DNA of 64,000 bases, from positions 1-64,000 of the forward strand of contig CDROCS010005160.1 of NCBI GenBank assembly GCA_977020255.1. Reading direction: 5' to 3'. Positions 204 to 64,000 of this stretch are shown one piece after another. The DNA comes from Obrimoposthia wandeli (lineage: Eukaryota). The notes below the pieces were generated by a model that worked only from the letters and a program-made list of their open reading frames with translations, made no database searches and had not been told where the DNA came from. The translations under genes were made by a program, and so were the position numbers. Position 1 is the first letter of the stretch; each line of letters begins with the position of its first letter.

Positions 204-522
204 AAATATCTTATTTTAAAATATAAAAGCCTGTTTATGAAGCCTATTTTTTTCATCCAAAATTTGTCTTAAAAATATATAAATTAAAATAATTTAAAAC
301 AATCCAATACCTCTAATAATTAATTGTTCATTAAATAAACCTCTGTTTATAATTCTAAAAAAGTTTAATTGTATTTCTTTTCAAAATATTGATGGTTAAA
401 AATTAATTTCGTATATTTTTATTAGCGCAAGAATTCCTTATATTCTAAATCTTCCGGTCAATTTCAAATATTATGTTGGAGCTAGCGTTGTTACACCTAA
501 TATGTAGACCTCTTCTACCCTT
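204..522. repeat. Long-unit AT-rich spacer, 3' part only (left edge of array)
   Basis: Matches 33233-33551 and ends in CTACCCTT|ATGAGTTC. Confidence 0.88.
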
Positions 523-819
523 ATGAGTTCTTAAATAGTTGGAAATTCACTGTATGGCCTACCCTTATTTGCTCGGCCAAATTGAGGTCACAGTGAATTG
601 TCAAAATCAAAGGAAATCTTCAGTTAAATAGTAAATTAGATTCACAGTAATAAAAATATATGTCCGATATGAACGCCTATTTCCGAAGCAATACTTACTG
701 GGCAACTTACTGATGCATTTTACTATTCGCACAACCCATAAAAGGTCACAACTTTGTATCGCACTCCAAATTAATCAAGTGTCATTATCCTATTGCCGGC
801 CTTCATTTGAAACTCTTAT

Positions 820-1135
820 TCGCGAGATCTTCGTGCGTCCAAACACCAGTTCTGTAGCGATAGGGCTTTACATAGAGATGGTTCACTTGTTCTATTCTTG
901 TTTAATTGTACGATCTTTCCATCTGTGTGGTTGTGTTTTTCGATTTACGATGTGGCGAGACTGAGAATGCTAGTTCTGCACATTGACAGGATGGGGAAGT
1001 CGAGGACTTGGTGCTGTTGGCAATGGGTATCCAGGTCTTGAGGCAGTGAATGTGGAATTAGTGCTTAGATAAAGTATAGCTCTGCAAGCTGCGTTCCAGA
1101 TTGTCTTGTAACAGATGGAATATTCTCCCAGACAT
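820..1135 (-). pseudogene. RING-H2 (RING-B) copy, frameshifted (probably read error)
   Basis: Collinear with 12568-12885, many indels. Confidence 0.6.
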
Positions 1136-2098
1136 TGCAGTGGGTGAAGTGGTTTTGAGTTAGCACCTCGGTTGAGGGTTGGTTTGTGCCGTGATGCTTA
1201 CAAACGTGGCTGCAGGTCCTGTCGTTCTGGCCACACAGGAGAACAACCAACAATTCTCTCTCAGTTTTCTATAACAATATTCCACTCGTACAACTACGTC
1301 CGCTTGGTTTGGTCTTCGATCATGATGTAATTTTGTGAGTTGTCTTCTGCATACGGGGCAACAAAGTATGTTGATGAGATAACTCTCCATAACTTATGAT
1401 ACATTTGATATATACATTCTTCGTGTTATAGGTGGTTGCAGGCATTGGGTCTTGCCTTTCACATTGTCAGAGTATAAAATAATCGCCATCAATGGAAAAA
1501 AAAATATTTTCAACTGGAAATATTTTATATAAACGATGTGGACAACTCCATTGCGATTATATTGTGCCGCTGGATTGTTCTGCTGATTTACGTTGTATAT
1601 GGACACTTACAGTTTAGAATAATTCATTTTAAAATTGAAAAGTCAATTCAAAAAACAGAAATGAACATCTTATACGTGACATAAAAAAGAAAAGCTCTAC
1701 AAAATAAGCTTGATTGAAATTTAAGCAATTGATTAAGAGAAAGAAATGAATATCAAACTTAAGAAAATATAATTGAAAAGTCAATTCAAAAAAATGAGTT
1801 CTTAACAGAAGTTGAATTACTGTATGGCCTACTCCCTTATTTGTCTCAATAAATCGAGTCATTGCGAATTGTCAAAATCAAAGGAAATCTTCAGTTAAAT
1901 AGTAAATTAGATTCAGTAATAAAAAATATATGTCCGATATGAACGCCTATTTCCGAAGCGCAAATTTTATTTGGCAACTTACTGATGCGCTTTACTATCT
2001 TCGCACAACCCATAAAAGGCTCGTCAAATCTTTGTATCGCACCCAAATTAATCAAGTGTCATTATCCTATTGTTGGGGTTTCATTTGAAACCTTTTAT

Positions 2099-2420
2099 TC
2101 AAGTAGATCTTCGTATGGAGGCCCCAAACACCAGTTCTGTAGCGATAGCTTCACATAGAGATGTGGTCTACCTGTTCTATTCTTTGCTCTAATTGTACGA
2201 TCTTTCCATCTGTGTGGTTGTGTGTTTTCGATTTACGATGTGGTACATCGAGAATGTTGCCCCGCACATTGGACAGGATGGGAAGTCGAGGGACTTGGTG
2301 CTGTTGGCAATGGCATCCAGGTCTTGAGGCAGCAGTCGTGGAATTTGGCGGCCGCAGATGTTAGGCCTGCAAGCCAGTTCCAGATTGTCTTGTAACAGAC
2401 GAATATTATTCTCCAGACAT
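2099..2420 (-). pseudogene. RING-B copy, frameshifted (probably read error)
   Basis: Fragment IANSTKSLDFPSCPMC is visible in ORF 2189-2638. Confidence 0.6.
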
Positions 2421-3055
2421 TGTGGCAGCGGTTTTGAGTTAGACTCGAAGTTGAGGCTAGTATGTTGTGTGATATTTACAATAAAAAGTGGCTGTGTCCT
2501 GGCTGTTCTGCCACAGCAGGAGAACAACCAACACTCTCTCAGTTTTCTTATAACACAGTCTCCAACCTCGCAACTACGTCCGCTTGGTTTGTTCTCGATC
2601 ATGATGTACTTTGTGAGTTGTCTTCTGCATACGGGCAACAGTATGTTGGATGAGATAACTCCTTACAACTTATGATACATTTTGATATACATTCCTCTCT
2701 TTCGTGTTATAGGTGGTTGCAGGCATTGGGTCTTGCCTTCGGTAATATTGTCAGAGTATAAAATAATCGCTATCACTGAAAGTAATATTTCTAACTGGAA
2801 ATATTTCTTATATAAACATGGACAACTCCATTGGTGATTTAAGTATTGTGCCGCTGGATTGTTCTGTTGATTTACGTTGTGTCACTTACAGTTTAGAATA
2901 ATTCATTTTAAATTGAAAAGTCAACTCAAAACAGAAATGAACATCTTATACGTGACATAAAAAAGAAAAGCTCTACAAAAATAAGTTGATTGAATTAAGC
3001 ACTTGATTAAGAGAAAGTGAACAACATTTCAAACTTTAAGAAAAAATATATAATT

Positions 3056-3972
3056 TCTTATTTCCTGAAAATATCCTAGCGTTCTATGGTTTCTAAATTC
3101 TAATTTTTTTAATTTGCCGATTTAATAAATTTCCCCATTTAGCTGGATCAGTTTATACTGGAACTCTTCCTTAGCTTCAGAATAAAAAAATTTACTAGTA
3201 TTTAAAAAATATCAATCATGATAGTGATGCTTACTTAGAAATGTTTCCGCTTATTAACTATATATCATTTTCTATTTTACAAAATGAAAACTTAACCTAG
3301 TTATATCGTAACGATCTGTCATTTGAATATTAACTTCTACAAATTATATTAATTTGAAATTTTACAAACTTTAGTTTTGTCGTGATTCTCCTTCCTTTTT
3401 CACCTTAAGATGAGAATTTGATTTATGTTCTTTATTCGAATATTTAGATTTGAAATAGGCTTCTAATTTCTTAATATCATCTATTGTTGGTTCTATTCTA
3501 CTTAAACCCCTGTTAATCCTTTCGATATTGAATTTTACATTTATTAAATTTTATAAAGATTTAAGAAATTTTTTTTTAATTGATCACGTGAATATTTTAA
3601 AAATAAGTGTGTAAAATTAAACATTCTGTGCCTACAATCAGTAAATATCTTATTTTAAAATATATAAAAGCCTGTTTATGAAGCTCATTTTTTTCATCCA
3701 AAATTTGTCTTAAAAATATATATAAATTAAAATAATTTAAAACAACCAATACCTCTAATAATTAATTGTTCACAAATAAACCTCTGTTTATAATTCTAAA
3801 AAAGTTTAATTTGTATTCTTTTTCAAAAATATTGATGGTTAAAAATTAATTTCTCTGTATATTTTTTATGGTCGCAAGAATTCTTTATATTCTAAATCTT
3901 CCGGTCAATTTTCAAATATTATGTTGGAGCTATGTTGTTAAGCACCTAATATGTAGACCTCTTTCTACCCTT
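3056..3972. repeat. Long-unit AT-rich spacer (noisy copy)
   Basis: Collinear with 32646-33551 (TTCTTATTTCCTGAAAAT ... CTACCCTT), with many small indels. Confidence 0.88.
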
Positions 3973-4269
3973 ATGAGTTCTTAACAGAAGTTGAATTACT
4001 GTATGGCCTACCCCTTATTTGTTTCAATAAATTGAGGTCATTGCGTGAATTGTCAAAATCAAAGGAAATCTTTCAGTTAAATAGCAAATTAGATTCAGTA
4101 ATAAAATATATGTCCGATATGAACGCCTATTTCCCGAAGCACATGATGGCAACTTACTGATGCGCTTACTATTCGCACAACCTATAAAAGGTCACTAAAT
4201 CTTTGTATCGCACCCAAATTAATCAAGTGTCATTATCCTATTGTTGGGGTTTCTATTTGAAACTCTTAT

Positions 4270-4586
4270 TCAAGTAGATCTTCGTATGGAGTGCTGCCCC
4301 AAACACCAGTTCTAGCGATAGGGCTTGGTTAATAGAGATGTGGTCTACCTGTTCTATTCTTGTTTAATTGTACGATCTTTCCATCTGTGTGGTTGTGTTC
4401 TCGGATTTACGATGTGGTACATCGAGAATGCTGCCCTGCACATTGGACAGATGGGAAGTCGAGGGACTTGGTGCTGTTGGCAATGGGGTATCCAGGCTGA
4501 GGCAGTGAATGTGAATTGGTGGCCGCAGATGTTAGGCTCTGCAGTTCCAGATTGTCTTTGTAACAGATGGAATATTCTCCAGACAT
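4270..4586 (-). pseudogene. RING-B copy, frameshifted (probably read error)
   Basis: Collinear with consensus unit. Confidence 0.6.
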
Positions 4587-5543
4587 TGCAGTGGGTGAAG
4601 TGGTTTTGAGTTAGGACTGGCTGAGGGTTGGTTTATTGTGCATGCTTACACAAACGTGGCTGTGTCCTGTCGTTCTGCCACACAGGAGAACAAACTAACA
4701 CTCTCTCTCAGTTTTCTATAACAATATTCCACCTGCATAACCATGTCCGCTTGGTTTGGTTCGATCTTCCATGATGTACTTCTTGTGAGTTGTCTTCTGC
4801 ATACGGGGCAAACAGTATGTTGGATGAGATAACTCTCCATAACTTATGATGATATACATTCTCGTGTTATAGGTGGTTGCAGGCATTGGTCTTGCTCTTC
4901 GTACATTGTTTGAGTATAAAAAATAATGCTTATCAATGGAAAAAATATTTTTCAACTGGAAATATTTTTATATAAACGATGTGGCCAACTCCATTGCGAT
5001 TATTATATTGTGCCGCTGGATTGTTCTGTTGATTTACGCCGTATATGGACACTACAGTTTAATAATAATTCATTTTAAATTAAAAGCCAATTCAAAACAG
5101 AAATGAACATCTTATACGTGACATAAAAAAGAAAAGCTCTACAAAATAAGTTGATTGAATTAAGCACTGGATTAAGAGAAAGTGAACAACATTTCAAACT
5201 TTTTAAAGAAAATATAATTGAAAAAGTCAATTCAAAAAAATGAGTTCTTACCAGAAGTTGAATTACTGTATGGCCTACCCTTATTTGTCTCAATAAATTG
5301 AGGTCATTGCGTGAATTGTCAAAATCAAAGGAAATTTTCAGTTAAATAGTAAATTAGATTCAGTAATAAAAAATATATGTCCGGATATGCGAACGCCTAT
5401 TTCCGAAGCAATACTTATTTGGCAACTTACTGATGCGCTTTACTATTCGCACAACCTATAAACGGTCACTAAATCTTTGTATCGCACCCAAATTAATCAA
5501 GTGTCATTATCCTATTGTTGGGGTTTCTATTTGAAACTCTTAT

Positions 5544-5777
5544 TCAAGTAGATCTTCGCATGGGATGCCCCAAACACCAGTTCTGTAGCGATAGGGCTTA
5601 CATAGAGATGTGGTCTACCTGTTCTATTCTTTTGTTTAATTGTACGATCTTTCCATCTGTGTGGTTGTAGCTCGATTTACGATGTGGCATATCGAGAATG
5701 TTGCCCCCTGCACATTGGACAGGAGGATGGGAAGTCGAGGGACTTGGTGCTGTTGGCAATGGGTATCCAGGTCTGAG
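5544..5777 (-). pseudogene. RING-B copy with ~180-bp deletion removing its N-terminal half
   Basis: CCAGGTCTGAG is joined directly to TTTGCCACACAG; the missing part corresponds to 12796-12973. Confidence 0.55.
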
Positions 5778-6320
5778 TTTGCCACACAGGAGAACAACCA
5801 CCACTCTCTCAGTTTCTATAACACATTCCACTCGTACAACTACGTCCGCTTGGTTTGCAGTTCGATCATGATGTACTTTTGTGAGTTGTCTCTGCATACG
5901 GGGCAACAAAGTATGCTTGATGAGATAACTCTCCAGCAACTTATGATACATTTTGATATACATTCCTCGTGTTATAGGTGGTTGCAAGTGCATTGGGTCT
6001 TGCTCGCACATTGTCAGAGCATAAAAATAATCGCCATCAATGGAAAAAAATATTTCAACTGAAATATTTTTATATAAACGATGTGGACAACTCCATTGCG
6101 ATTATATTGTGCCGCTGGATTGTTCTGCTGATTTACGTTGTATATGGACACTTACAGTTTATAATAATTCATTTTAAATTGAAAAAGTCAATTCAAAACA
6201 GAAATGAACATCTTATACGTGACATAAAAAGAAAAGCTCTACAAAATAAGTTGATTGAATTAAGCACTGAATTAAGAGAAAGTGAACAACATTTCAAACT
6301 TTTAAGAAAAATATATAATT

Positions 6321-7218
6321 TCTTATTTCCTGAAAATATCCTAAAGGTTCCTATGGTTTCTTAAAATTTAATTTTTTTAATTTGCCGATTTAATAAATTT
6401 CCCCATTTAGCTGGATTCTAGTTTATACTGGAAATTTCCTTAGCTTCAGAATAAAAAATTTACTAGTATTTAAAAATATCAATCATATAGGTATGCTTAC
6501 TAGAAATGAGTCATTATATCAACATTTATTTACAAAATGAAAACTTCTAACTGTAGTTATACGAATGATCTGTCATTTGAATATTAACTTCTACAAACTA
6601 CAATTATATTAATTTGAAATTTTACAAACTTTGTTTGTCAGATTCTCCCTTCCTCCTTTTTCACCTTTAAGATGAGAATTTGATTTATGTTCTTTGCCCG
6701 AATATTTAGATTTGAAATAGGCTTCTAATTTCTTAATATCATCATCTATTGTTGGTTCTATTCTCTTACTTAAATTTTGTTAATCATTTCCTGATTTTGA
6801 ATTTTATATTTATTAAATTTTATAAAGATTTAAGAAATTTTTTTAATTGATCACGTGAATATTTTAAAATAAGGTGTAAAATTAAACATTCTGTATCTAC
6901 AACTGCAACATCTTATTTTAAAATATAAAAAGCCTGCTTTATAGCTTCATTTTTTTTCTTATCCAAAATTTGTCTTAAAATATATAAATTAAAATAATTT
7001 AAAAACAATCCAATACCCTTAATAATTAATTGTTCATTAAATAAACCTCTGTTTATAATTCTAAAAAAGTTTAATTGTATTTTTCAAAAATATTGATGGT
7101 TAAAAAATTAATTTCGTATATTTTTTTTATCGCAAGAATTTATATTCTAAATCTTCCGGTCAATTTCAAATATTATGGAGCTAGCGTTGTTACACCTAAT
7201 ATGTAGACCTTTACCCTT
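6321..7218. repeat. Long-unit AT-rich spacer (noisy copy)
   Basis: Collinear with 32646-33551. Confidence 0.88.
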
Positions 7219-7527
7219 ATGAGTTCTTAACAGGTTAAATTACTGTATATGGCTCAATTTTTTATTTGTTCCCAATAAATTGAGGTCATTGCGTGAATTG
7301 TCAAAAAAATCAAAGGAAATCTTCAGTTAAATAGTAAATTAGGGATTCAGTAATAAAAATATATGTCCGATATGAACGCCTATTTCCGAAGCAATACTTA
7401 TTTGGCAACTTACTGATGCGCTTTTTACTATTCGCACAACCTATAAAAGGTCACTTGGGCCTTGTATCGCACCTAAATTAATCGCTATGTCATTATCCTA
7501 TTGTAGCTCTTATTTGAAAACTCTTAT

Positions 7528-7839
7528 TCAAGTAGATTCGTATGGAGGCCCCAAACACCAGTTCTGTAGCGATAGGGCTACATAGAGATGTGGTCTACCT
7601 GTTCTATTCTTTTGTTTAATTGTACGATCTTTCCATCTGTGTGGTTGTTTGATTTACGATGTGTACATCGAGAATGTTGCTCTGCACATTGGACAGGATG
7701 GGAAGTCGAGGGACTTGGTGCTGTTGGCAGCGGTATCCAGGTCATGAAGCAGTGAATGTGGAATTGGTGGCCGCAGATGTTAGGCTCTGCAAGCCAGTTC
7801 CAGGATTGTCTTGTAACAGATGGAATATTCTCCAGACAT
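7528..7839 (-). pseudogene. RING-B copy, frameshifted (probably read error)
   Basis: Collinear with consensus unit. Confidence 0.6.
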
Positions 7840-8777
7840 TGCAGTGGGTGAGGTGGTTTTGAGTTAGGACTCGGTTGAGGGTTGGTTTGTTGTGTGATGT
7901 TTACACAAAAGTGGCTGTGTCCGTTCTGCTACACAGAAGAACAACCAACACTTTTCCAGTTTTCAACAATATTCCACTCCTGTACAACTATCCTGCTTGG
8001 TTTGGTTCGATCATGATGTACTTTAGTGAGTTGTCTTCAGTATACGAGGCAACAGTATGTTGATGAGATAACCTCCATAACTTATGATACATTTGATATA
8101 CATTTCATGTTATAGGTGGTTGCAGGCATTGGTTGTCTTGCTCTTCGTACATTGTCAGAGTATAAAATAATCGTATCAATGGAAAAAATATTTTCAACTG
8201 AAATATTTTATCTAAACGATGTGACACCCATTGCGATTATATTGTGCCGCTGGATTGTTCTTGCTGATTTACGTTTCGTATATGGACACTTACAGTTTAT
8301 ACAATTCATTTTAAATTGAAAAAGCTCAATTCAAAACAGAAATGAACATCTTATACGTGACATAAAAAAGAAAAAGCTCTAAAATAAGTTGGATTGAATT
8401 AAGCACTGAATTAAGAGAAAGTGAACAACATTTCAAACTTTTAAGAAAATATAATTAAAAAGTCAATTCAAAAAAATGAGTTCTTAACAGAAGTTTGAAC
8501 TCATCATATGGCCTACCCTTATTTGTCTCATCAAATTGAGGTCATTATGTGAATTGTCAAAAATCAAAGGAAATCTTCAGTTAAATAGTAAATTTGGGAT
8601 TCAGTAATAAAATATATGTCCGATATGAACGCCTATTTCCTAATACTTATTTGGCAAATTTACTGATGCGCTTTTAATATTCGCACAACCTATAAAAGGT
8701 CACTAAATCTTGTATCGCACCCAAATTAATCAAGTGTCATTATCCTGCTGTTGGGGTTTCTATTTGAAACTCTTAAT

Positions 8778-9091
8778 TCAAGTAGATTCGCATGGAGGCC
8801 CCAAACACCAGTTCTGTAGCGATAGCTTACATAGAGATGTGGTCTTACCTGTTCTATTCTTGTTTAATTGTACGATCTTTCCATCTGTGTGGTTGTAGCT
8901 CTTTCGATTTACGATGTGGTACATCGAGAATGTTGCCCTGCACATTGGACAGGATGGGAAGTCGAGGGACTTGGTGCTGTTGGCAATGGGTGTCCAGGCC
9001 TGAGCAGTGAATGGGAATTGGTGGCCGCAGATGTTAGGCTCTGCAAGCCAGCCCAGATTGTCTTGTAACAGACGGAATATTCTCCAGACAT
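8778..9091 (-). pseudogene. RING-B copy, frameshifted (probably read error)
   Basis: MSGEYSVCYKTIW start at 9091. Confidence 0.6.
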
Positions 9092-10042
9092 TGCAGTGGG
9101 TGAAGTGGTTTTGAGTTAGGACTCGGTTGAGGGTTGGTATGTTGTGTGATATTTACACAAAGTGGCTGTGTCCTGTCGTTCTGCCACACAGAGAACAACC
9201 AACACTCTCAGTTTTCTATAACAATATTCCACTCAAACTACGTCCGCTTGGTTTGCCCGACCATGATGTACTTTTGTGAGTTGTCTTCTGCATACGGGGC
9301 AACAAAGTATGTTGATGAGATAACTCTCCATAACTTATGATACATTTTGATATACATTCCTCGTGTTATAGTGGCTGCGCATTGGGTTCAAGTTTCTGCA
9401 CATTGTCAGAGTATAAAATAATCGCTATCGAAAAAAATATTTTCTTTAACTGGAAATATTTTATATAAACGATGTGGACAACTCCATTGCGATTATATTG
9501 TGCCGCTGTATTGTTCTGTTGATTTACATGCTGTATATGGACACTTACAGTTTATAATAATTCATTTTAAATTGAAAAGTCAATTCAAACAGAAATGAAC
9601 ATCTTATACGTGACATAAAAAGAAAAGCTCTACAAAATAAGTTGATTGAATTAAGCACTGAATGAGAGAAAGTGAACAAATTTTCAAACTTTTAAGAAAA
9701 ATATAATTGAAAAGTCAATTCAAAAAATGAGTTCTTAACACAGAAGTTGAATTACTGTATGGCCTACTCTTATTTGTCTCCAATAAATTGAGGTCATCAT
9801 GCGTGAATTGTCAAAATCAAAGGAAATCTTCAGTTAAATAGTAAATTAGATTCAGTAATAAAAACATATGTCCGATATGAACGCCTATTTCCGAAGCAAT
9901 ACTTATTTGGCAACTTACCGATGCGCTTTACTATTCGCACACAACCTATAAAAGGTCACTAAACTTCTTTGTATCATCGCACCCAAATTAATCAAGTGTC
10001 ATTATCCTATTGTTGGGGTTTCCTCTTATTTGAAACTCTTAT

Positions 10043-10359
10043 TCAAGTAGATCTTCGTATGGAGTTCCCAAACACCAGTTCTGTAGCGATAGGGCTTACA
10101 TATAGATGTGGTCTACCTGTTCTATTCTTGTTTAATTGTACGATCTTTCCATCTGTGTGGTTGTGTTTCGATTTACGATGTGGTACATCGAGAATGTTGC
10201 CCTGCACATTGACAGGATGGGAAGTCGAGGGACTTGGTGCTGTTGGCAATGGGTATCCAGGTCTTGAGGCAGTGAATGTGGAATTGGTGGCCGCAGATGT
10301 TAGGCTCTGCAAGCCAGTTCCAGATTGTCTCTGTAACAGACGGAATATTCTCCAGACAT
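10043..10359 (-). pseudogene. RING-B copy, frameshifted (probably read error)
   Basis: WNWLAEPNICGHQFHIHCLKTW is visible in ORF 10173-10574. Confidence 0.6.
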
Positions 10360-11301
10360 TGCAGTGGGTGAAGTGGTTTTGAGCAGTTAAACTCGGCTTG
10401 AGGGTTGGTATGTTGTGTGATATTTACACAAAAAGTGGTTGTGTCCTGTCGTTCCCAAGCCACACAGAAGAACAACCAACACTCTCTCAGTTTTCTATAA
10501 CAATATTCCACCTGTACAACTACGTCCGCTTGGTTTGGTTCGATCATGATGTACTTTGTGAGTTGTCTTCGCATACGGGCAACAAAGTGTTGGATGAGAT
10601 AACCTCCATAACTTATGATACATTTTGATATACATGCTTCGTGTTATAGGTGGTTGCAGGCATTGGGGTCTTGTTTCTTAGTACATTGTCAGAGTATAAA
10701 ATAATCGATCAATGGAAAAAAATATTTTCAACTGAAATATTTTATATAAACGATGTGGACAACTCCATTGATTATATTGTGCCGCTGGATTGTTCTGGTT
10801 GATTTACGTTGTATATGGACACTTACAGTTTATAATAATTCATTTTAAATTGAAAAAGTCAATTCAAAACAGAAATGAACATCTATATGACATAAAAAAG
10901 AAAAGCTCTACAAACAAGTTGATTGAATTAAGCACTGAATTAAGAGAAAGTGAACAACATTTCAAACTTTAAGAAAAATATAATTGAAAAGTCAATTCAA
11001 AAAATGAGTTCTTAACAGAAGTTGAATTACTGTATGGCCTACCTTATTTGTCTCAATAAATTGAGGTCATTGCGTGAATGTCAAAATCAAAGGAAATCTT
11101 CAGTTAAATAGTAAATTAGATTCAGTAATAAAAATATATGTCCGATATGAACGCCTATTTCCGAAGCTTAATACTTATTTGGCAACTTACTGATGCGCTT
11201 TACTATTCGCACAACCTATAAAAGGTCACTAAATCTTTGTATCACCTAAATTAATCAAGTGTCATTATCCTATTGTTGGGGTTTCTATTTGAAACTCTTA
11301 T

Positions 11302-11618
11302 TCATGTAGATCTTGGTGGTGGCGGCCTCATCACAAGATCTGTAGCGATAGGGCTTACATAGAGATGTGGTCTACCGGTTATATTCTTGTTTAATTGTAC
11401 GATCTTTCCATCTGTGTGGTTGTGTTTCGATTTACGATGTGGTACATCGAGAATGTTGCCCTGCACATTGGACAGGATGGGAAGTCGAGGGACTTGGTGC
11501 TGTTGGCAATGGGTATCCAGGTCTTGAGGCAGTGAATGTGGAATTGGTGGCCGCAGATGTTAGGCTCTGCAAGCCAGTTCCAGATTGTCTTGTAACAGAC
11601 GGAATATTCTCCAGACAT
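11302..11618 (-). pseudogene. RING-B copy, RING domain in frame, C-terminus frameshifted
   Basis: ORF 11391-11618 carries the full motif through CPMCR. Confidence 0.6.
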
Positions 11619-11871
11619 TGCAGTGGGTGAAGTGGTTTTGAGTTAGGACTCGGTTGAGGGTTGGTATGTTGTGTGATGTTTACACAAAAGTGGCTGTGTC
11701 CTGTCGTTCTGCCACACAGAAGAACAACCAACACTCTCTCAGTTTTCTATAACAATATTCCACTCGTACAACTACGTCCGCTTGGTTTGGTTCGATCATG
11801 ATGTACTTTGTGAGTTGTCTTCTGCATACGGGGCAACAAAGTATGTTGGATGAGATAACTCTCCATAACTT

Positions 11872-12246
11872 ATGATACATTTTGATATACATTCCTCATG
11901 TTATAGGTGGTTGCAGGCATTGGGTCTTGCTCTTCGTACATTGTCAGAGTATAAAATAATCGCCATCAATGGAAAAAAATATTTTCAACTGGAAATATTT
12001 TATATAAACGATGTGGACAACTCCATTGCGATTATATTGTGCCGCTGTATTGTTCTGCTGATTTACGTTGTATATGGACACTTACAGTTTATAATAATTC
12101 ATTTTAAATTGAAAAAGTCAATTCAAAACAGAAATGAACATCTTATACGTGACATAAAAAGAAAAGCTCTACAAAATAAGTTGATTGAATTAAGCACTGA
12201 ATTAAGAGAAAGTGAACAACATTTCAAACTTTTAAGAAAAATATAA
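11872..12246 (+). other. 124-aa ORF recurring in most short units; N-half is antisense to RING-A, C-half is the truncated coiled-coil-like exon; probably not a true gene as called
   Basis: From the ORF track. It is broken in copies with a 6-A instead of 7-A run (e.g. 13279, 18350). Its stop lies at the short-unit junction. Confidence 0.25.
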
Positions 12247-12480
12247 TTGAAAAGTCAATTCAAAAAAATGAGTTCTTAACAGAAGTTGAATTACTGTATG
12301 GCCTACCCTTATTTGTCTCAATAAATTGAGGTCATTGCGTGAATTGTCAAAATCAAAGGAAATCTTCAGTTAAATAGTAAATTAGATTCAGTAATAAAAA
12401 TATATGTCCGATATGAACGCCTATTTCCGAAGCAATACTTATTTGGCAACTTACTGATGCGCTTTACTATTCGCACAACC

Positions 12481-12488
12481 TATAAAAG
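12481..12488 (+). promoter_or_regulatory. Consensus TATA-box-like TATAAAAG, once per unit, pointing antisense into RING-B (representative copy)
   Basis: Exact TATAWAAG match. It could arise by chance in AT-rich DNA, and there is no expression evidence. Confidence 0.2.
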
Positions 12489-12567
12489 GTCACTAAATCT
12501 TTGTATCGCACCCAAATTAATCAAGTGTCATTATCCTATTGTTGGGGTTTCTATTTGAAACTCTTAT

Positions 12568-12885
12568 TCAAGTAGATCTTCGTATGGAGGCCCCAAACAC
12601 CAGTTCTGTAGCGATAGGGCTTACATAGAGATGTGGTCTACCTGTTCTATTCTTGTTTAATTGTACGATCTTTCCATCTGTGTGGTTGTGTTCTCGATTT
12701 ACGATGTGGTACATCGAGAATGTTGCCCTGCACATTGGACAGGATGGGAAGTCGAGGGACTTGGTGCTGTTGGCAATGGGTATCCAGGTCTTGAGGCAGT
12801 GAATGTGGAATTGGTGGCCGCAGATGTTAGGCTCTGCAAGCCAGTTCCAGATTGTCTTGTAACAGACGGAATATTCTCCAGACAT
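12568..12885 (-). CDS. RING-H2 zinc-finger protein (RING-B), 105 aa, first ligand Cys replaced by Tyr; E3-ligase-like, possibly non-functional
   Basis: YSVC-x13-CGHQFHIHC-LKTW-x14-CPMC fits C3H2C3 spacing, with the conserved Trp and Pro. Domain identity is strong; expression is unknown. Confidence 0.6.
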   Translation of the reverse strand: MSGEYSVCYKTIWNWLAEPNICGHQFHIHCLKTWIPIANSTKSLDFPSCPMCRATFSMYHIVNREHNHTDGKIVQLNKNRTGRPHLYVSPIATELVFGASIRRST

Positions 12886-12946
12886 TGCAGTGGGTGAAGT
12901 GGTTTTGAGTTAGGACTCGGTTGAGGGTTGGTATGTTGTGTGATAT

Positions 12947-13233
12947 TTACACAAAAGTGGCTGTGTCCTGTCGTTCTGCCACACAGAAGAACAACCAACA
13001 CTCTCTCAGTTTTCTATAACAATATTCCACTCGTACAACTACGTCCGCTTGGTTTGGTTCGATCATGATGTACTTTGTGAGTTGTCTTCTGCATACGGGG
13101 CAACAAAGTATGTTGGATGAGATAACTCTCCATAACTTATGATACATTTTGATATACATTCCTCGTGTTATAGGTGGTTGCAGGCATTGGGTCTTGCTCT
13201 TAGTACATTGTCAGAGTATAAAATAATCGCCAT
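12947..13233 (-). pseudogene. Degenerate upstream RING-H2 paralogue (RING-A); representative copy, present in every unit
   Basis: One frame reads MAIILYSDNVL(R/T)RARPNACNHL*HEECISKCI (C-x-H-x2-H-x2-C with an in-frame TAA). A shifted frame continues SSNILCCPVCRRQLTKYIMIEP. There are 53 nt between ligand 6 and CPVC, 1 nt short of the 18 codons seen in RING-B. The first CxxC pair is not recognisable. Confidence 0.7.
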
Positions 13234-13834
13234 CAATGGAAAAAATATTTTCAACTGGAAATATTTTATATAAACGATGTGGACAACTCCATTGCGATTA
13301 TATTGTGCCGCTGTATTGTTCTGCTGATTTACGTTGTATATGGACACTTACAGTTTATAATAATTCATTTTAAATTGAAAAAGTCAATTCAAAACAGAAA
13401 TGAACATCTTATACGTGACATAAAAAGAAAAGCTCTACAAAATAAGTTGATTGAATTAAGCACTGAATTAAGAGAAAGTGAACAACATTTCAAACTTTTA
13501 AGAAAAATATAATTGAAAAAGTCAATTCAAAAAAATGAGTTCTTAACAGAAGTTGAATTACTGTATGGCCTACCCTTATTTGTCTCAATAAATTGAGGTC
13601 ATTGCGTGAATTGTCAAAATCAAAGGAAATCTTCAGTTAAATAGTAAATTAGATTCAGTAATAAAAATATATGTCCGATATGAACGCCTATTTCCGAAGC
13701 AATACTTATTTGGCAACTTACTGATGCGCTTTACTATTCGCACAACCTATAAAAGGTCACTAAATCTTTGTATCGCACCCAAATTAATCAAGTGTCATTA
13801 TCCTATTGTTGGGGTTTCTATTTGAAACTCTTAT

Positions 13835-30634: not shown

Positions 30635-31264
30635 TGCAGTGGGTGAAGTGGTTTTGAGTTAGGACTCGGTTGAGGGTTGGTTTGTTGTGTGATGTTTACA
30701 CAAAAGTGGCTGTGTCCTGTCGTTCTGCTACACAGAAGAACAACCAACACTCTCTCAGTTTTCTATAACAATATTCCACTCGTACAACTACGTCCGCTTG
30801 GTTTGGTTCGATCATGATGTACTTTGTGAGTTGTCTTCTGCATACGGGGCAACAAAGTATGTTGGATGAGATAACTCTCCATAACTTATGATACATTTTG
30901 ATATACATTCCTCATGTTATAGGTGGTTGCAGGCATTGGGTCTTGCTCTTCGTACATTGTCAGAGTATAAAATAATCGCCATCAATGGAAAAAAATATTT
31001 TCAACTGGAAATATTTTATATAAACGATGTGGACAACTCCATTGCGATTATATTGTGCCGCTGGATTGTTCTGCTGATTTACGTTGTATATGGACACTTA
31101 CAGTTTATAATAATTCATTTTAAATTGAAAAAGTCAATTCAAAACAGAAATGAACATCTTATACGTGACATAAAAAGAAAAGCTCTACAAAATAAGTTGA
31201 TTGAATTAAGCACTGAATTAAGAGAAAGTGAACAACATTTCAAACTTTTAAGAAAAATATAATT

Positions 31265-31505
31265 GAAAATATCCTAAAGTCAATTCAAAAAAATGAGTTT
31301 AGTTCTTAACAGAAGTTATTAACTATATATCAACATTTATTTACAAAATGAATTACTGTATGGCCTACCTTATCTCAATAAATTGAAATAGGCTGATTGG
31401 TGAATATTTTAAAAATAAGTGTAAAATTAAACAAATTGTCAAAATCAAAATATTGTTCATTAAATAAACCACTGTTTAAATCTTTTAATTGTATTTCAGT
31501 TAAAA
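31265..31505. other. Mosaic of long-spacer fragments and short-unit start (probable consensus artefact)
   Basis: Spacer pieces (GAAAATATCCTAAAG; TTATTAACTATATATCAACATTTATTTACAAAATG; GTGAATATTTTAAAAATAAGTG; TTGTTCATTAAATAAACC) are interleaved, in their original order, with short-unit sequence. Period is 1,382 bp. Confidence 0.75.
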
Positions 31506-31698: not shown

Positions 31699-32016
31699 TC
31701 AAGTAGATCTTCGTATGGAGGCCCCAAACACCAGTTCTGTAGCGATAGGGCTTACATAGAGATGTGGTCTACCTGTTCTATTCTTGTTTAATTGTACGAT
31801 CTTTCCATCTGTGTGGTTGTGTTCTCGATTTACGATGTGGTACATCGAGAATGTTGCCCTGCACATTGGACAGGATGGGAAGTCGAGGGACTTGGTGCTA
31901 GTGGCAATGGGTATCCAGGTCTTGAGGCAGTGAATGTGGAATTGGTGGCCGCAGATGTTAGGCTCTGCAAGCCAGTTCCAGATTGTCTTGTAACAGACGG
32001 AATATTCTCCAGACAT
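31699..32016 (-). CDS. RING-B 105 aa copy (N-to-T variant, IPIATSTK)
   Basis: One substitution relative to consensus. Confidence 0.55.
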   Translation of the reverse strand: MSGEYSVCYKTIWNWLAEPNICGHQFHIHCLKTWIPIATSTKSLDFPSCPMCRATFSMYHIVNREHNHTDGKIVQLNKNRTGRPHLYVSPIATELVFGASIRRST

Positions 32017-32529: not shown

Positions 32530-32946
32530 AAATGAACATCTTATACGTGACATAAAAAGAAAAGCTCTACAAAATAAGTTGATTGAATTAAGCACTGAAT
32601 TAAGAGAAAGTGAACAACATTTCAAACTTTTAAGAAAAATATAATTTCTTATTTCCTGAAAATATCCTAAAGGTTCTATGGTTTCTTAAAATTTAATTTT
32701 TTTAATTTACCGATTTAATAAATTTCCCCATTTAGCTGGATTCTAGTTTATACTGGAACTTTCCTTAGCTTCAGAATAAAAAATTTACTAGTATTTAAAA
32801 ATATCAATCATATAGGTATGCTTACTAGAAATGAGTCATTATTAACTATATATCAACATTTATTTACAAAATGAAAACTTCTAACTGTAGTTATACGAAT
32901 GATCTGTCATTTGAATATTAACTTCTACAAACTACAATTATATTAA
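32530..32946 (+). pseudogene. Putative spliced gene fragment (coiled-coil exon, then hydrophobic segment), continuous only in the long unit
   Basis: Exon-like NEHLIRDIKRKALQNKLIELSTELRESEQHFKLLRKI(YNFLFPENILKVL). Candidate introns are 32681-32735 (GTTTCT..CATTTAG, 55 nt) and 32816-32890 (GTATGC..CTAACTGTAG, 75 nt). The frame needs ATATATAATTT as at 3047 and 6311; this copy lacks one TA. No family recognised. Confidence 0.3.
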
Positions 32947-33551
32947 TTTGAAATTTTACAAACTTTGTTTGTCAGATTCTCCTTCCTTTTTCACCTTAAG
33001 ATGAGAATTTGATTTATGTTCTTTATTCGAATATTTAGATTTGAAATAGGCTTCTAATTTCTTAATATCATCTATTGTTGGTTCTATTCTACTTAAACCT
33101 CTGTTAATCATTTCGATTTTGAATTTTATATTTATTAAATTTTATAAAGATTTAAGAAATTTTTTTTAATTGATCACGTGAATATTTTAAAAATAAGTGT
33201 GTAAAATTAAACATTCTGTATCTACAATCAGTAAATATCTTATTTTAAAATATAAAAGCCTGTTTATGAAGCCTATTTTTTTCATCCAAAATTTGTCTTA
33301 AAAATATATAAATTAAAATAATTTAAAACAATCCAATACCTCTAATAATTAATTGTTCATTAAATAAACCTCTGTTTATAATTCTAAAAAAGTTTAATTG
33401 TATTTCTTTTCAAAATATTGATGGTTAAAAATTAATTTCGTATATTTTTTTTATCGCAAGAATTCCTTATATTCTAAATCTTCCGGTCAATTTCAAATAT
33501 TATGTTGGAGCTAGCGTTGTTACACCTAATATGTAGACCTCTTCTACCCTT
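32646..33551. repeat. Long-unit AT-rich spacer (~906 bp, clean copy), absent from short units
   Basis: The period here is 2,153 bp rather than ~1,268 bp. The same segment occurs at 3056, 6321 and partially at 204. Confidence 0.92.
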
Positions 33552-33851
33552 ATGAGTTCTTAACAGAAGTTGAATTACTGTATGGCCTACCCTTATTTGT
33601 CTCAATAAATTGAGGTCATTGCGTGAATTGTCAAAATCAAAGGAAATCTTCAGTTAAATAGTAAATTAGATTCAGTAATAAAAATATATGTCCGATATGA
33701 ACGCCTATTTCCGAAGCAATACTTATTTGGCAACTTACTGATGCGCTTTACTATTCGCACAACCTATAAAAGGTCACTAAATCTTTGTATCGCACCCAAA
33801 TTAATCAAGTGTCATTATCCTATTGTTGGGGTTTCTATTTGAAACTCTTAT

Positions 33852-36123: not shown

Positions 36124-36258
36124 ACTTCCTTATTTAATTTGAAATCTCAATAAATTGATTTATGTTCTTTATTCGTCATTTCTTAATATCATCTATTGCG
36201 TGAATTGTCAAAATCAAAGGAAATCTTCAGTTAAATAGTAAATTAGATTCAAAATATT
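36124..36258. other. Small mosaic of long-spacer fragments in a short unit (probable consensus artefact)
   Basis: Inserted TTGATTTATGTTCTTTATTCG and TTTCTTAATATCATCTATTG come from the long spacer. Period is 1,316 bp. Confidence 0.7.
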
Positions 36259-36753: not shown

Positions 36754-37384
36754 TGCAGTGGGTGAAGTGGTTTTGAGTTAGGACTCGGTTGAGGGTTGGT
36801 ATGTTGTGTGATATTTACACAAAAGTGGCTGTGTCCTGTCGTTCTGCCACACAGAAGAACAACCAACACTCTCTCAGTTTTCTATAACAATATTCCACTC
36901 GTACAACTACGTCCGCTTGGTTTGGTTCGATCATGATGTACTTTGTGAGTTGTCTTCTGCATACGGGGCAACAAAGTATGTTGGATGAGATAACTCTCCA
37001 TAACTTATGATACATTTTGATATACATTCCTCATGTTATAGGTGGTTGCAGGCATTGGGTCTTGCTCTTCGTACATTGTCAGAGTATAAAATAATCGCCA
37101 TCAATGGAAAAAATATTTTCAACTGGAAATATTTTATATAAACGATGTGGACAACTCCATTGCGATTATATTGTGCCGCTGGATTGTTCTGCTGATTTAC
37201 GTTGTATATGGACACTTACAGTTTATAATAATTCATTTTAAATTGAAAAAGTCAATTCAAAACAGAAATGAACATCTTATACGTGACATAAAAAGAAAAG
37301 CTCTACAAAATAAGTTGATTGAATTAAGCACTGAATTAAGAGAAAGTGAACAACATTTCAAACTTTTAAGAAAAATATAATTGA

Positions 37385-38175
37385 AAATAATTCAAAGGTT
37401 CTATGGTTTCTTAACAGATTGAATTTTTTTAATGGCCTACCGATTTAATAAATTTCCCCATTTAGCTGGATTCTAGTCATACTGGAACTTTCAGCTTCAA
37501 ATAGTAAAAGATTCAGTATTTAAAAATATCAATCATATAACGTATGCTTCCGACTAGAAATAGTCATTATTAACTATATATCGCATTTATTTACAACCTA
37601 TGAAAAGGTCTTCTAACTGTAGTTATACGAATGATCTGTCATTTGAATATTGTTGGGGTTTCTACAAACTACAATTATATTAATTTGAAATTTTACAAAC
37701 TTCTGTAGCGATTCTCCTTCTTTTTCATAGAGATGATTTATGTTCTTTATTCGAATATTTAGATTTGAAATAGGCTTCTAATTTCTTAATATCATCTATT
37801 GTTGGTTCTATTCTACTTAAACCTCTGTTAATCATTTCGATTTTGAATTTTATATTTATTAAATTTTATAAAGATCAATTGATCACGTGAATATTTTATA
37901 AATAAGTGTGTAAAATTAAACATTCTGTATCTAAATCAGTAAATATTTTTTTAAAATATAAACGATGTGGACGTTATATTGTGCCGCTGTATTGTTATTT
38001 AATATTTGTTTAAATAATATAAATTGAAAATCAATTCAAAACAGAAATAACCTCTTATAATTCATAAAAAGAAAAGCTCTACAAAATAAGTTGATTGAAT
38101 TAAGCAAATTAAGAGAAAGTGAACAACATTTCAAACATTAAAGAAAAATATAATTGAAAAGTCAATTCAAAAAAT
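37385..38175. other. Long spacer partly overwritten by short-unit sequence (probable consensus artefact)
   Basis: Mostly spacer sequence in order, with patches of short-unit sequence (e.g. AACGATGTGGAC...GTGCCGCTGTATTG, GAAAAGCTCTACAAAATAAG). Period is 2,038 bp. Confidence 0.75.
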
Positions 38176-38473
38176 GAGTTCTTAACAGAAGTTGAATTAC
38201 TGTATGGCCTACCCTTATTTGTCTCAATAAATTGAGGTCATTGCGTGAATTGTCAAAATCAAAGGAAATCTTCAGTTAAATAGTAAATTAGATTCAGTAA
38301 TAAAAATATATGTCCGATATGAACGCCTATTTCCGAAGCAATACTTATTTGGCAACTTACTGATGCGCTTTACTATTCGCACAACCTATAAAAGGTCACT
38401 AAATCTTTGTATCGCACCCAAATTAATCAAGTGTCATTATCCTATTGTTGGGGTTTCTATTTGAAACTCTTAT

Positions 38474-60025: not shown

Positions 60026-60343
60026 TCAAGTAGATCTTCGTATGGAGGCCCCAAACACCAGTTCTGTAGCGATAGGGCTTACATAGAGATGTGGTCTACC
60101 TGTTCTATTCTTGTTTAATTGTACGATCTTTCCATCTGTGTGGTTGTGTTCTCGATTTACGATGTGGTACATCGAGAATGTTGCCCTGCACATTGGACAG
60201 GATGGGAAGTCGAGGGACTTGGTGCTGTTGGCAATGGGTATCCAGGTCTTGAGGCAGTGAATGTGGAATTGGTGGCCGCAGATGTTAGGCTCTGCAAGCC
60301 AGTTCCAGATTGTCTTGTAACAGACGGAATATTCTCCAGACAT
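60026..60343 (-). CDS. RING-B 105 aa copy
   Basis: Identical protein. Confidence 0.55.
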   Translation of the reverse strand: MSGEYSVCYKTIWNWLAEPNICGHQFHIHCLKTWIPIANSTKSLDFPSCPMCRATFSMYHIVNREHNHTDGKIVQLNKNRTGRPHLYVSPIATELVFGASIRRST

Positions 60344-61292: not shown

Positions 61293-61610
61293 TCAAGTAG
61301 ATCTTCGTATGGAGGCCCCAAACACCAGTTCTGTAGCGATAGGGCTTACATAGAGATGTGGTCTACCTGTTCTATTCTTGTTTAATTGTACGATCTTTCC
61401 ATCTGTGTGGTTGTGTTCTCGATTTACGATGTGGTACATCGAGAATGTTGCCCTGCACATTGGACAGGATGGGAAGTCGAGGGACTTGGTGCTGTTGGCA
61501 ATGGGTATCCAGGTCTTGAGGCAGTGAATGTGGAATTGGTGGCCGCAGATGTTAGGCTCTGCAAGCCAGTTCCAGATTGTCTTGTAACAGACGGAATATT
61601 CTCCAGACAT
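61293..61610 (-). CDS. RING-B 105 aa copy
   Basis: Identical protein. Confidence 0.55.
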   Translation of the reverse strand: MSGEYSVCYKTIWNWLAEPNICGHQFHIHCLKTWIPIANSTKSLDFPSCPMCRATFSMYHIVNREHNHTDGKIVQLNKNRTGRPHLYVSPIATELVFGASIRRST

Positions 61611-62561
61611 TGCAGTGGGTGAAGTGGTTTTGAGTTAGGACTCGGTTGAGGGTTGGTATGTTGTGTGATATTTACACAAAAGTGGCTGTGTCCTGTCGTT
61701 CTGCCACACAGAAGAACAACCAACACTCTCTCAGTTTTCTATAACAATATTCCACTCGTACAACTACGTCCGCTTGGTTTGGTTCGATCATGATGTACTT
61801 TGTGAGTTGTCTTCTGCATACGGGGCAACAAAGTATGTTGGATGAGATAACTCTCCATAACTTATGATACATTTTGATATACATTCCTCGTGTTATAGGT
61901 GGTTGCAGGCATTGGGTCTTGCTCTTCGTACATTGTCAGAGTATAAAATAATCGCCATCAATGGAAAAAAATATTTTCAACTGGAAATATTTTATATAAA
62001 CGATGTGGACAACTCCATTGCGATTATATTGTGCCGCTGTATTGTTCTGCTGATTTACGTTGTATATGGACACTTACAGTTTATAATAATTCATTTTAAA
62101 TTGAAAAAGTCAATTCAAAACAGAAATGAACATCTTATACGTGACATAAAAAGAAAAGCTCTACAAAATAAGTTGATTGAATTAAGCACTGAATTAAGAG
62201 AAAGTGAACAACATTTCAAACTTTTAAGAAAAATATAATTGAAAAAGTCAATTCAAAAAATTTGAGTTCTTAACAGAAGTTGAATTACTGTATGGCCTAC
62301 CCTTATTTGTCTCAATAAATTGAGGTCATTGCGTGAATTGTCAAAATCAAAGGAAATCTTCAGTTAAATAGTAAATTAGATTCAGTAATAAAAATATATG
62401 TCCGATATGAACGCCTATTTCCGAAGCAATACTTATTTGGCAACTTACTGATGCGCTTTACTATTCGCACAACCTATAAAAGGTCACTAAATCTTTGTAT
62501 CGCACCCAAATTAATCAAGTGTCATTATCCTATTGTTGGGGTTTCTATTTGAAACTCTTAT

Positions 62562-62879
62562 TCAAGTAGATCTTCGTATGGAGGCCCCAAACACCAGTTC
62601 TGTAGCGATAGGGCTTACATAGAGATGTGGTCTACCTGTTCTATTCTTGTTTAATTGTACGATCTTTCCATCTGTGTGGTTGTGTTCTCGATTTACGATG
62701 TGGTACATCGAGAATGTTGCCCTGCACATTGGACAGGATGGGAAGTCGAGGGACTTGGTGCTGTTGGCAATGGGTATCCAGGTCTTGAGGCAGTGAATGT
62801 GGAATTGGTGGCCGCAGATGTTAGGCTCTGCAAGCCAGTTCCAGATTGTCTTGTAACAGACGGAATATTCTCCAGACAT
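62562..62879 (-). CDS. RING-B 105 aa copy
   Basis: Identical protein. Confidence 0.55.
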   Translation of the reverse strand: MSGEYSVCYKTIWNWLAEPNICGHQFHIHCLKTWIPIANSTKSLDFPSCPMCRATFSMYHIVNREHNHTDGKIVQLNKNRTGRPHLYVSPIATELVFGASIRRST

Positions 62880-63829
62880 TGCAGTGGGTGAAGTGGTTTT
62901 GAGTTAGGACTCGGTTGAGGGTTGGTATGTTGTGTGATATTTACACAAAAGTGGCTGTGTCCTGTCGTTCTGCCACACAGAAGAACAACCAACACTCTCT
63001 CAGTTTTCTATAACAATATTCCACTCGTACAACTACGTCCGCTTGGTTTGGTTCGATCATGATGTACTTTGTGAGTTGTCTTCTGCATACGGGGCAACAA
63101 AGTATGTTGGATGAGATAACTCTCCATAACTTATGATACATTTTGATATACATTCCTCGTGTTATAGGTGGTTGCAGGCATTGGGTCTTGCTCTTAGTAC
63201 ATTGTCAGAGTATAAAATAATCGCCATCAATGGAAAAAAATATTTTCAACTGGAAATATTTTATATAAACGATGTGGACAACTCCATTGCGATTATATTG
63301 TGCCGCTGGATTGTTCTGCTGATTTACGTTGTATATGGACACTTACAGTTTATAATAATTCATTTTAAATTGAAAAAGTCAATTCAAAACAGAAATGAAC
63401 ATCTTATACGTGACATAAAAAGAAAAGCTCTACAAAATAAGTTGATTGAATTAAGCACTGAATTAAGAGAAAGTGAACAACATTTCAAACTTTTAAGAAA
63501 AATATAATTGAAAAAGTCAATTCAAAAAAATGAGTTCTTAACAGAAGTTGAATTACTGTATGGCCTACCCTTATTTGTCTCAATAAATTGAGGTCATTGC
63601 GTGAATTGTCAAAATCAAAGGAAATCTTCAGTTAAATAGTAAATTAGATTCAGTAATAAAAATATATGTCCGATATGAACGCCTATTTCCGAAGCAATAC
63701 TTATTTGGCAACTTACTGATGCGCTTTACTATTCGCACAACCTATAAAAGGTCACTAAATCTTTGTATCGCACCCAAATTAATCAAGTGTCATTATCCTA
63801 TTGTTGGGGTTTCTATTTGAAACTCTTAT

Positions 63830-64000
63830 TCAAGTAGATCTTCGTATGGAGGCCCCAAACACCAGTTCTGTAGCGATAGGGCTTACATAGAGATGTGGTC
63901 TACCTGTTCTATTCTTGTTTAATTGTACGATCTTTCCATCTGTGTGGTTGTGTTCTCGATTTACGATGTGGTACATCGAGAATGTTGCCCTGCACATTGG
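63830..64000 (-). CDS. RING-B copy, C-terminal part only (cut by window end)
   Basis: Matches 12568 onward up to the window edge. Confidence 0.5.
   Translation of the reverse strand, partial: PMCRATFSMYHIVNREHNHTDGKIVQLNKNRTGRPHLYVSPIATELVFGASIRRST

What the first reader, a model, noticed from the sequence alone, without database searches (positions are those of the whole stretch)
204..64000. Gene-bearing macrosatellite: ~48 tandem units each carrying RING-H2 E3-ligase-like sequence
Seen: 39 intact 105-aa RING-H2 ORFs (38 identical, one with a single substitution), 8 noisy copies and one partial copy, head-to-tail over more than 63 kb. Established: ORF-containing macrosatellites exist (human D4Z4/DUX4, RS447/USP17; Drosophila Stellate and Su(Ste)) and act through dosage or small-RNA silencing. 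Inference: this may be an analogous recent amplification of a ubiquitin-pathway locus. I do not recognise it as a described array, but I cannot search to confirm that it is novel.
Basis: partly seen in the sequence, partly recalled or inferred. Interest (0 to 1): 0.7.

Follow-up and report, generated by a model that had tools for sequence, protein, structure and literature searches.

The report
Repeat-derived tandem array with relic RING frame
This is a real, young tandem array of 1.27-kb units, but its RING-finger reading frame is a damaged piece of a very abundant scattered repeat, not a working ubiquitin-ligase gene, so it is an ordinary repeat-derived satellite.

Summary
Units of about 1,268 bp lie head to tail from window 204 to the window's end and on to contig position 70,607. 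That is about 53 units, with 43 identical 105-aa frames. Word depth in public read contigs suggests 200-300 copies, so this is not an assembler loop; the assembly looks collapsed instead.

The reading as a gene-bearing macrosatellite of a ubiquitin-pathway locus is not supported.
- About 655 bp of each unit comes from an old, internally deleted copy of a scattered multi-ORF repeat (83-87% identity; 4,795 DNA and 22,907 protein first-look candidates).
- That repeat carries three small RING-H2 modules in series.
- The 105-aa frame starts inside module 2 and has Tyr in place of the first zinc-binding Cys.
- It has lost the family's conserved Cys-rich tail and ends in sequence brought next to it by the deletion.
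- Module 1, just upstream, is broken by a stop and a frameshift.
- Against a 3%-diverged copy on another contig the frame shows 9 nonsynonymous and 1 synonymous change.
- All three frames on that strand are poor in stops.
- No RNA data were available.

Verdict: a new member of a known kind, a satellite born from a scattered repeat.

The parts
204..64000 (.). Tandem array of ~1,268-bp units. It runs past the window to contig position 70,607, giving about 53 units in the assembly.
12101..13368 (+). Reference short unit (1,268 bp), used for all unit coordinates in this report.
12568..12885 (-). Example of the 105-aa frame. Residues 1-75 come from RING-H2 module 2 of the scattered repeat, with Tyr5 where the family has Cys. 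Residues from about 76 to 105 come from repeat sequence that lies 2-3 kb further downstream in other copies.
12662..13206 (-). Unit positions 562-1106. This part is 83-87% identical to the scattered repeat and holds the 3' part of RING module 1 and most of module 2.
12947..13233 (-). Remnant of RING-H2 module 1. Its first Cys pair is missing, it has an in-frame stop, and a frameshift precedes the last Cys pair. Coordinates are approximate.
12537..12646 (-). Unit positions 437-546. This piece lies 2.0-3.2 kb downstream of the RING core in at least 9 scattered copies. Here it sits 15 bp from the core, which marks an internal deletion.
32647..33552 (+). The 906-bp AT-rich insert that defines the long unit (~2,155 bp). 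It is low-copy DNA. Other copies lie at 3056-3973, 6321-7219 and 204-523 (partial), plus a noisy one at 37382-38065.
523..12100 (.). Noisy units at the left edge, 89-97% identical to the reference unit. Their differences are rich in indels and almost all private to one unit.
31264..31503 (.). Mosaic stretch that alternates collinear snippets of the 906-bp insert with snippets of the short unit. It is read here as a consensus built from two read populations. A second such stretch lies at 36125-36198.
31699..32016 (-). The one variant 105-aa frame (N39T).
1..169 (+). 45-bp minisatellite (3.7 copies) at the left flank and contig start. It belongs to the terminal direct repeat of another scattered element of about 14 kb.

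Best explanation
This is a young, homogenised macrosatellite that grew from a decayed copy of a scattered repeat. The steps below are inferred from the anatomy.

1. An old copy of a very abundant multi-ORF repeat sat at this locus. On one strand that repeat carries phosphatase-like ORFs, a membrane-protein ORF and three small RING-H2 modules.
2. This copy lost 1.5-2.6 kb internally and became joined to low-copy AT-rich DNA.
3. A segment of about 2.15 kb spanning both parts was duplicated in tandem.
4. A variant lacking 906 bp (the 1,268-bp unit) then spread through the array by unequal exchange and conversion. It reached about 53 assembled units, and probably 200-300 real ones.

The 105-aa frame is a by-product of this history. 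It begins at a Met inside RING module 2, lacks the first zinc ligand and the family's Cys-rich tail, and runs into unrelated sequence. It is identical across units because the whole unit is 99.8% identical, not because it is selected. The array most likely does nothing for the cell as a protein-coding locus.
For: Array and copy number:
- The array is real and high-copy.

Origin of the unit:
- Unit positions 562-1106 and 437-546 match 25 scattered copies at 80-90% identity. The rest of the unit matches none of them.
- The 906-bp insert is low-copy.
- The right flank of the array is the phosphatase-like part of the same repeat, in the order and orientation seen on C1235 and C1481.

State of the frame:
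- Natural copies show two RING-H2 modules, each followed by a Cys-rich tail.
- The array frame has Tyr at ligand 1, where 22 of 24 aligned proteins have Cys.
- Module 1 is broken.
- The frame's tail is predicted disordered (pLDDT below 50 for residues 71-99), while the core resembles RING domains.
- Against the C1828 copy there are 9 nonsynonymous and 1 synonymous differences.
- All three frames of this segment are poor in stops in the scattered copies, and the unit holds two other frames of 100 aa or more with no Pfam match.

Age:
- The repeat-derived part is at least 13% diverged from every copy examined, while units differ by about 0.2%.
Against: - The frame is intact in every clean unit and in the 3%-diverged C1828 copy.
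- Seven of the eight zinc ligands and the conserved Trp remain.
- No variant column among the clean units falls inside the frame (0 of 12 substitution columns, about 3 expected). However, the variant-poor stretch covers unit positions 170-833, far more than the frame.
- No RNA data could be examined, so expression is untested.
- Polishing of a collapsed array may have inflated the identity between units.
- The selection test rests on only 10 differences.
Confidence: 0.8

Rival explanations
1. The array is a working multicopy gene cluster. Each unit would express the 105-aa RING-like protein, with dosage set by copy number, as RS447 does for USP17.
For: There are 43 identical open frames, and the frame is also intact in the C1828 copy. 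Pfam finds RING-H2 families above the cut-off for zf-ANAPC11. The core folds like RING domains. No variant column falls in the frame.
Against: Zinc ligand 1 is lost. The conserved Cys-rich tail is replaced by sequence brought in by a deletion. pN/pS against the C1828 copy is 2.5. The identity of the frames is explained by 99.8% identity across the whole unit. Open frames are common in all three frames here. No related annotated protein was found.
Confidence: 0.06
2. The array is a small-RNA source. It would work like a piRNA cluster or Su(Ste), with transcripts of the repeat-derived part silencing the abundant RING-bearing repeat. This does not exclude a neutral origin.
For: About half of each unit is homologous to a repeat with thousands of copies, some of them young (98% identical over more than 8.6 kb), and many intact 121-aa frames exist. 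The array is high-copy and all units point the same way.
Against: Identity to the scattered copies examined is only 83-87%, which is low for small-RNA targeting. No RNA run was available. Nothing in the sequence itself points to small-RNA production (Rfam: nothing above threshold).
Confidence: 0.1
3. The array is an assembly artefact: an assembler looping over 1-2 real copies, or a library concatemer.
For: Mosaic consensus stretches and noisy edge units show that the assembly is imperfect here.
Against: Array-specific words are about 200 times deeper than flank words in read contigs. Neighbouring units share variants. Both flanks are present in the contig.
Confidence: 0.03

Closest known systems
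Satellites and tandem arrays born from transposable elements (for example the hobo, Bari1 and R1 arrays of Drosophila; McGurk & Barbash 2018, PMC5932611; reviews PMC12628747 and PMC9659126)
   Same: Part of the unit is a fragment of a scattered repeat. The amplification is recent and the units are homogenised. The edges look more diverged, and variants are shared locally.
   Different: The unit is not a whole element or an element dimer. It is a mosaic of an internally deleted fragment plus about 610 bp (short unit) or about 1,500 bp (long unit) of low-copy DNA. The class of the source repeat is unresolved.
Human ORF-bearing macrosatellites: D4Z4/DUX4, RS447/USP17 and TAF11-like (review PMC5687341)
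   Same: The unit is kilobase-sized, there are tens to hundreds of copies, and each unit holds one open frame. The TAF11-like unit also contains transposon fragments.
   Different: Those ORFs encode complete proteins. For DUX4 and USP17, expression or activity of the product has been shown. Here the frame is a truncated module with a lost zinc ligand and no sign of selection or expression.
Stellate / Su(Ste) of Drosophila (from my own knowledge, not checked here)
   Same: These are tandem arrays related to a protein-coding repeat, where one array can act through small RNAs.
   Different: No small-RNA evidence exists here, and the homology to possible targets is only about 85%.
RING-H2 E3 ligase domains (APC11, RBX1, RNF38, RLIM)
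   Same: The motif and spacing of ligands 2-8 match. The nearest solved chain is APC11 (E 4e-5), and the top fold matches are RING domains.
   Different: Ligand 1 is Tyr, there is no substrate-binding part, and the tail is not native to the family.

Membership tests
RING-H2 zinc finger (C3H2C3) E3 ligase domain | Eight zinc ligands, C-x2-C ... C-x-H-x2-H-x2-C ... C-x2-C | tested here: not met
   Seven of eight are present. Position 5 is Tyr in the array frame and in the C1828 copy, and Cys in the other 22 aligned sequences. Natural copies of the family read GEC/GKC-S-x-C at that place.
RING-H2 zinc finger (C3H2C3) E3 ligase domain | Profile match above the curated threshold | tested here: met
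   zf-ANAPC11 scores 31.3 bits against a cut-off of 25. zf-RING_2 scores 23.7 against 27.3, so it falls below its cut-off.
RING-H2 zinc finger (C3H2C3) E3 ligase domain | Cross-brace RING fold | tested here: inconclusive
   The AlphaFold2 core (residues 11-60) has pLDDT 68-85. The top Foldseek matches are all RING domains with rmsd 1.4-1.8 A over about 40 residues, but E is 0.1 or worse. The model ignores zinc.
RING-H2 zinc finger (C3H2C3) E3 ligase domain | E2-dependent ubiquitin transfer | not testable with these tools
   This needs a biochemical assay.
ORF-bearing macrosatellite (D4Z4/RS447 type) | Kilobase unit in a head-to-tail array of tens or more copies | tested here: met
ORF-bearing macrosatellite (D4Z4/RS447 type) | The unit encodes a complete, conserved protein | tested here: not met
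   The frame is a truncated, chimeric module. pN/pS is 2.5. No related protein was found in the databases.
ORF-bearing macrosatellite (D4Z4/RS447 type) | Transcription or translation of the ORF | not testable with these tools
   No RNA run was listed. Only read contigs from one DNA sample were available.
Satellite derived from a scattered repeat | The unit contains sequence homologous to a scattered repeat family | tested here: met
   Unit positions 562-1106 and 437-546 match 25 fetched copies at 80-90% identity. First-look candidates number 4,795 (DNA) and 22,907 (protein).
Satellite derived from a scattered repeat | The source family is a mobile element (termini, target-site duplications, transposition enzyme) | tested here: inconclusive
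   Coverage decays gradually on both sides of the core. Young copies exceed 8.6 kb.

The most novel reading that the evidence does not exclude
The array could be a domesticated by-product of the RING-bearing repeat. It would be transcribed and would either supply small RNAs that restrain that very abundant and partly young repeat family, or produce a seven-ligand RING-like decoy protein that interferes with the repeat's own RING-H2 proteins.
Probability: 0.08. Interest if true: 0.6.

Novelty: new member of a known kind. Interest (0 to 1): 0.28.

Why it matters
The result sets aside a tempting reading, an amplified ubiquitin-ligase gene. It shows step by step how a decayed repeat fragment plus neighbouring DNA becomes a macrosatellite with a neat but empty reading frame. 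It also flags that the assembly probably holds only a quarter to a fifth of the real array. The more interesting object is the source family: small RING-H2 ORFs in thousands of copies, many still intact, and absent from protein databases.

Tried and rejected
- Word searches for relatives of the 105-aa frame, of the family's RING module and of the membrane protein found nothing.
- The full HMMER search with a natural RING module (L004:5373-5678) gave only generic RING-H2 similarity. The best hits are multi-RING proteins of a water lily and a fungus.
- The ESM Atlas search on the membrane protein gave weak FN3-like leads only.
- Rfam found nothing above threshold. The mir-52 matches scored 23 bits against a cut-off of 50.
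- I tested whether the 45-bp minisatellite at the left flank belongs to the RING-bearing repeat. It is absent from all 28 loci.
- I tested whether the rest of the unit is a diverged part of the repeat. A sensitive BLAST found no match.
These were the contig beyond 74 kb, the 86% copy at 99.5 kb, and longer repeat copies. I did not try to get those letters through another tool and kept loci at 0 in later genome searches.
I reran it with references only.
- The organism could not be identified because run names are coded. Ig and FN3-like domains suggest an animal.
- Raw reads were not available, so depth comes from read contigs only.
Full report
**Observation.** The window is the first 64 kb of a 267-kb contig (C5160) of a 1.35-Gb assembly in 6,912 contigs.
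- Repeated 20-mers are spaced mainly at 1266-1270 bp.
- One 1,268-bp unit (12101-13368) tiles the window from 523 to its end. It continues for 6.6 kb more, to contig position 70,607.
There are 38 identical 105-aa minus-strand frames in the window and 5 more beyond it. There is one variant (N39T), 8 noisy copies in the first 12 kb, and one copy cut by the window's end.
- Three units are of a long form of about 2,155 bp, with 906 extra AT-rich bases (3056-3973, 6321-7219, 32647-33552). The array itself starts inside such an insert at 204.

**Is the array real?**
- An array-specific 28-mer occurs 47 times in the assembly, all within this array.
- Only contigs built from public reads of one sample were on hand, with no raw reads and no RNA.
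- In run X1, two contigs that match array-specific sequence exactly have word depths of 12,000 and 10,657. Three contigs that match the flank exactly have depths of 45-59. Run X2 gives a similar ratio.
- This points to roughly 200-300 copies, four to five times more than assembled. The tool warns that such depths are not true copy numbers, so I treat this as an order of magnitude.
- It does rule out an assembler loop over one or two copies.
- Twelve recurrent variant columns are shared by neighbouring units in blocks, as in arrays that evolve by local exchange.

**Signs of an imperfect assembly.**
- Stretches 31264-31503 and 36125-36198 alternate collinear snippets of the 906-bp insert with snippets of the short unit. 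I read this as a consensus built from two read populations.
- The left-edge units carry 31-110 substitutions and 13-67 indels each, almost all private to one unit.
- The noisy right-edge unit has little or no matching read contig over part of its length. Much of the 'noise' may therefore be consensus error.
- Polishing of a collapsed array may also have inflated the 99.8% identity of the inner units.

**What the unit is made of.**
- Unit positions 562-1106 match scattered loci at 83-87% identity. The DNA first look gave 4,795 candidates.
- I fetched 25 such loci.
- Read copy by copy, they carry two paralogous small RING-H2 modules in series. Each has the full C3H2C3 pattern followed by a Cys-rich tail and a stop. 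A third RING-H2 lies about 0.9 kb downstream.
- Upstream on the same strand lies an ORF of about 250 aa with a C-terminal membrane anchor and no Pfam match.
- Further upstream are sequences like a dual-specificity phosphatase (DSPc, 74 bits in L002).
- Three copies are 98% identical over more than 8.6 kb and also carry a gene for a secreted protein with three Ig domains.
- The array's right flank, from contig position 70,608, is the phosphatase-like part of this repeat. It lies in the same order and orientation relative to the RING part as on contigs C1235 and C1481. The array therefore seems to sit inside one old copy.
- Unit positions 437-546 match a piece that lies 2.0-3.2 kb downstream of the RING core in at least nine copies. 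In the unit it is only 15 bp away, so the source copy had an internal deletion.
- The rest of the unit matches none of the fetched loci, even with a sensitive search.
- The 906-bp insert is low-copy. It occurs only in the array, at two places on C1828 (94-98% identity), and as an inverted 86% copy at C5160:99,505-100,430.

**The 105-aa frame.**
- It starts at a Met that lies inside a longer open stretch in the family copies.
- Residues 1-75 are RING module 2.
- Where the family has Cys-x2-Cys, the frame has Tyr-x2-Cys. In an alignment of 24 proteins, only the array frame and its C1828 relative lack this Cys.
- The family's Cys-rich tail is gone. From about residue 76 the frame reads through the deletion into the downstream piece.
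- That part is predicted disordered, while the core (pLDDT 68-85) resembles RING domains of gp78, RNF165, APC11 and HRD1. By sequence the nearest solved chain is APC11.
- RING module 1, just upstream in each unit, has lost its first Cys pair and carries a stop and a frameshift.
- The C1828 copy keeps a 105-aa frame with 10 nucleotide differences, 9 of them nonsynonymous (pN/pS 2.5).
- All three frames of this GC-richer segment are poor in stops in the scattered copies. Each unit also has a 124-aa frame and a 100-aa frame with no Pfam match.
- Among clean units no variant column lies in the frame. However, the variant-poor stretch covers positions 170-833, far more than the frame.

**Interpretation.**
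- The repeat-derived part of the unit is at least 13% diverged from every copy examined, while units differ by about 0.2%. An old, decayed and internally deleted copy of the repeat, joined to low-copy DNA, was therefore amplified recently.
- The long unit came first. The short unit is its 906-bp deletion variant and now dominates.
- The frame is carried along by this history. I put 0.8 on this reading.
- Rivals are a working gene array (0.06), a small-RNA source against the repeat (0.1, not exclusive of a neutral origin), and an assembly artefact (0.03).

**Comparison with known systems.**
- Satellites that arise from transposable elements are well described (PMC5932611; reviews PMC12628747 and PMC9659126).
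- Human macrosatellites such as D4Z4, RS447 and TAF11-like carry complete ORFs. For DUX4 and USP17, expression or activity of the product has been shown (PMC5687341).
- This array shares their architecture but fails the test of a complete, conserved ORF.

**The source family.**
- A natural RING module (L004:5373-5678) has 22,907 first-look candidates in this genome.
- All 150 scored candidates match at E of 1e-39 or better. About 90 of them, at 58-65% identity, have an uninterrupted 121-aa frame.
- Nothing close exists among 1.84 billion representative proteins.
- Whether this family is a transposon, an endogenous virus or an expanded gene family is open.

**A note on method.**
- At, before I knew what the family was, I made a majority-letter reading of a 1.5-kb core of the 25 copies, only to see the reading frames.
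- I deleted the file, used it in no search, and base every statement above on natural copies.
- Because the family might be virus-like in what is probably an animal genome, I made no further consensus or repaired frame, and I refer that step.
I did not try to get more through other tools.

Noticed in passing
whole genome; examples held: L004:5373-5678, L013:4324-4629: The genome holds a very large family of small RING-H2 ORFs with a Cys-rich tail. The protein first look gave 22,907 candidates. About 90 of the 150 scored have an intact 121-aa stop-to-stop frame at 58-65% identity to the query. No close relative exists in public protein collections.
   Followed up: partly
L019, L020 (C1235) and L028 (C2323), whole loci: Three copies are 98% identical over more than 8.6 kb. 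On one strand they carry phosphatase-like ORFs, an ORF with a C-terminal membrane anchor, three RING-H2 modules and a secreted protein with three Ig domains. This is either a large young mobile element or a virus-like insert of unknown class.
   Followed up: partly
window 1-169; also C153, C431, C487, C2723, C2941, C3523: The 45-bp minisatellite at the contig start recurs at more than 30 loci, usually as 4-5 copies. It often forms two same-strand blocks 13.7-13.8 kb apart, like the terminal direct repeats of an element of about 14 kb. The array's left edge abuts such a repeat.
   Followed up: partly
C5160:99505-100430, minus strand (outside the window): An inverted, 86%-identical copy of the long unit's 906-bp insert lies 29 kb to the right of the array. 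It may be related to the progenitor DNA. It could not be fetched.
   Followed up: no
L005:6217-8135 and L006:5006-6246 (contig C1828): Two fragments of the long unit, 94-98% identical to the array, lie about 36 kb apart on another contig. Each is bounded by other repeats. One keeps an intact but diverged 105-aa frame.
   Followed up: partly
window 12699-13001 (-) and the same segment of the scattered copies: A Ser/Thr/Pro-rich alternative frame that overlaps the RING frame stays open for 100-160 aa in the array and in many scattered copies, more often than the RING frame itself. This is probably a composition effect.
   Followed up: partly
L017, about 2.2-3.9 kb upstream of the RING core: ORFs that resemble the packaging ATPase and the integrase of a Maverick/Polinton-type element lie next to one copy of the RING-bearing repeat. 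This rests on reading the motifs by eye, not on a profile search.
   Followed up: no
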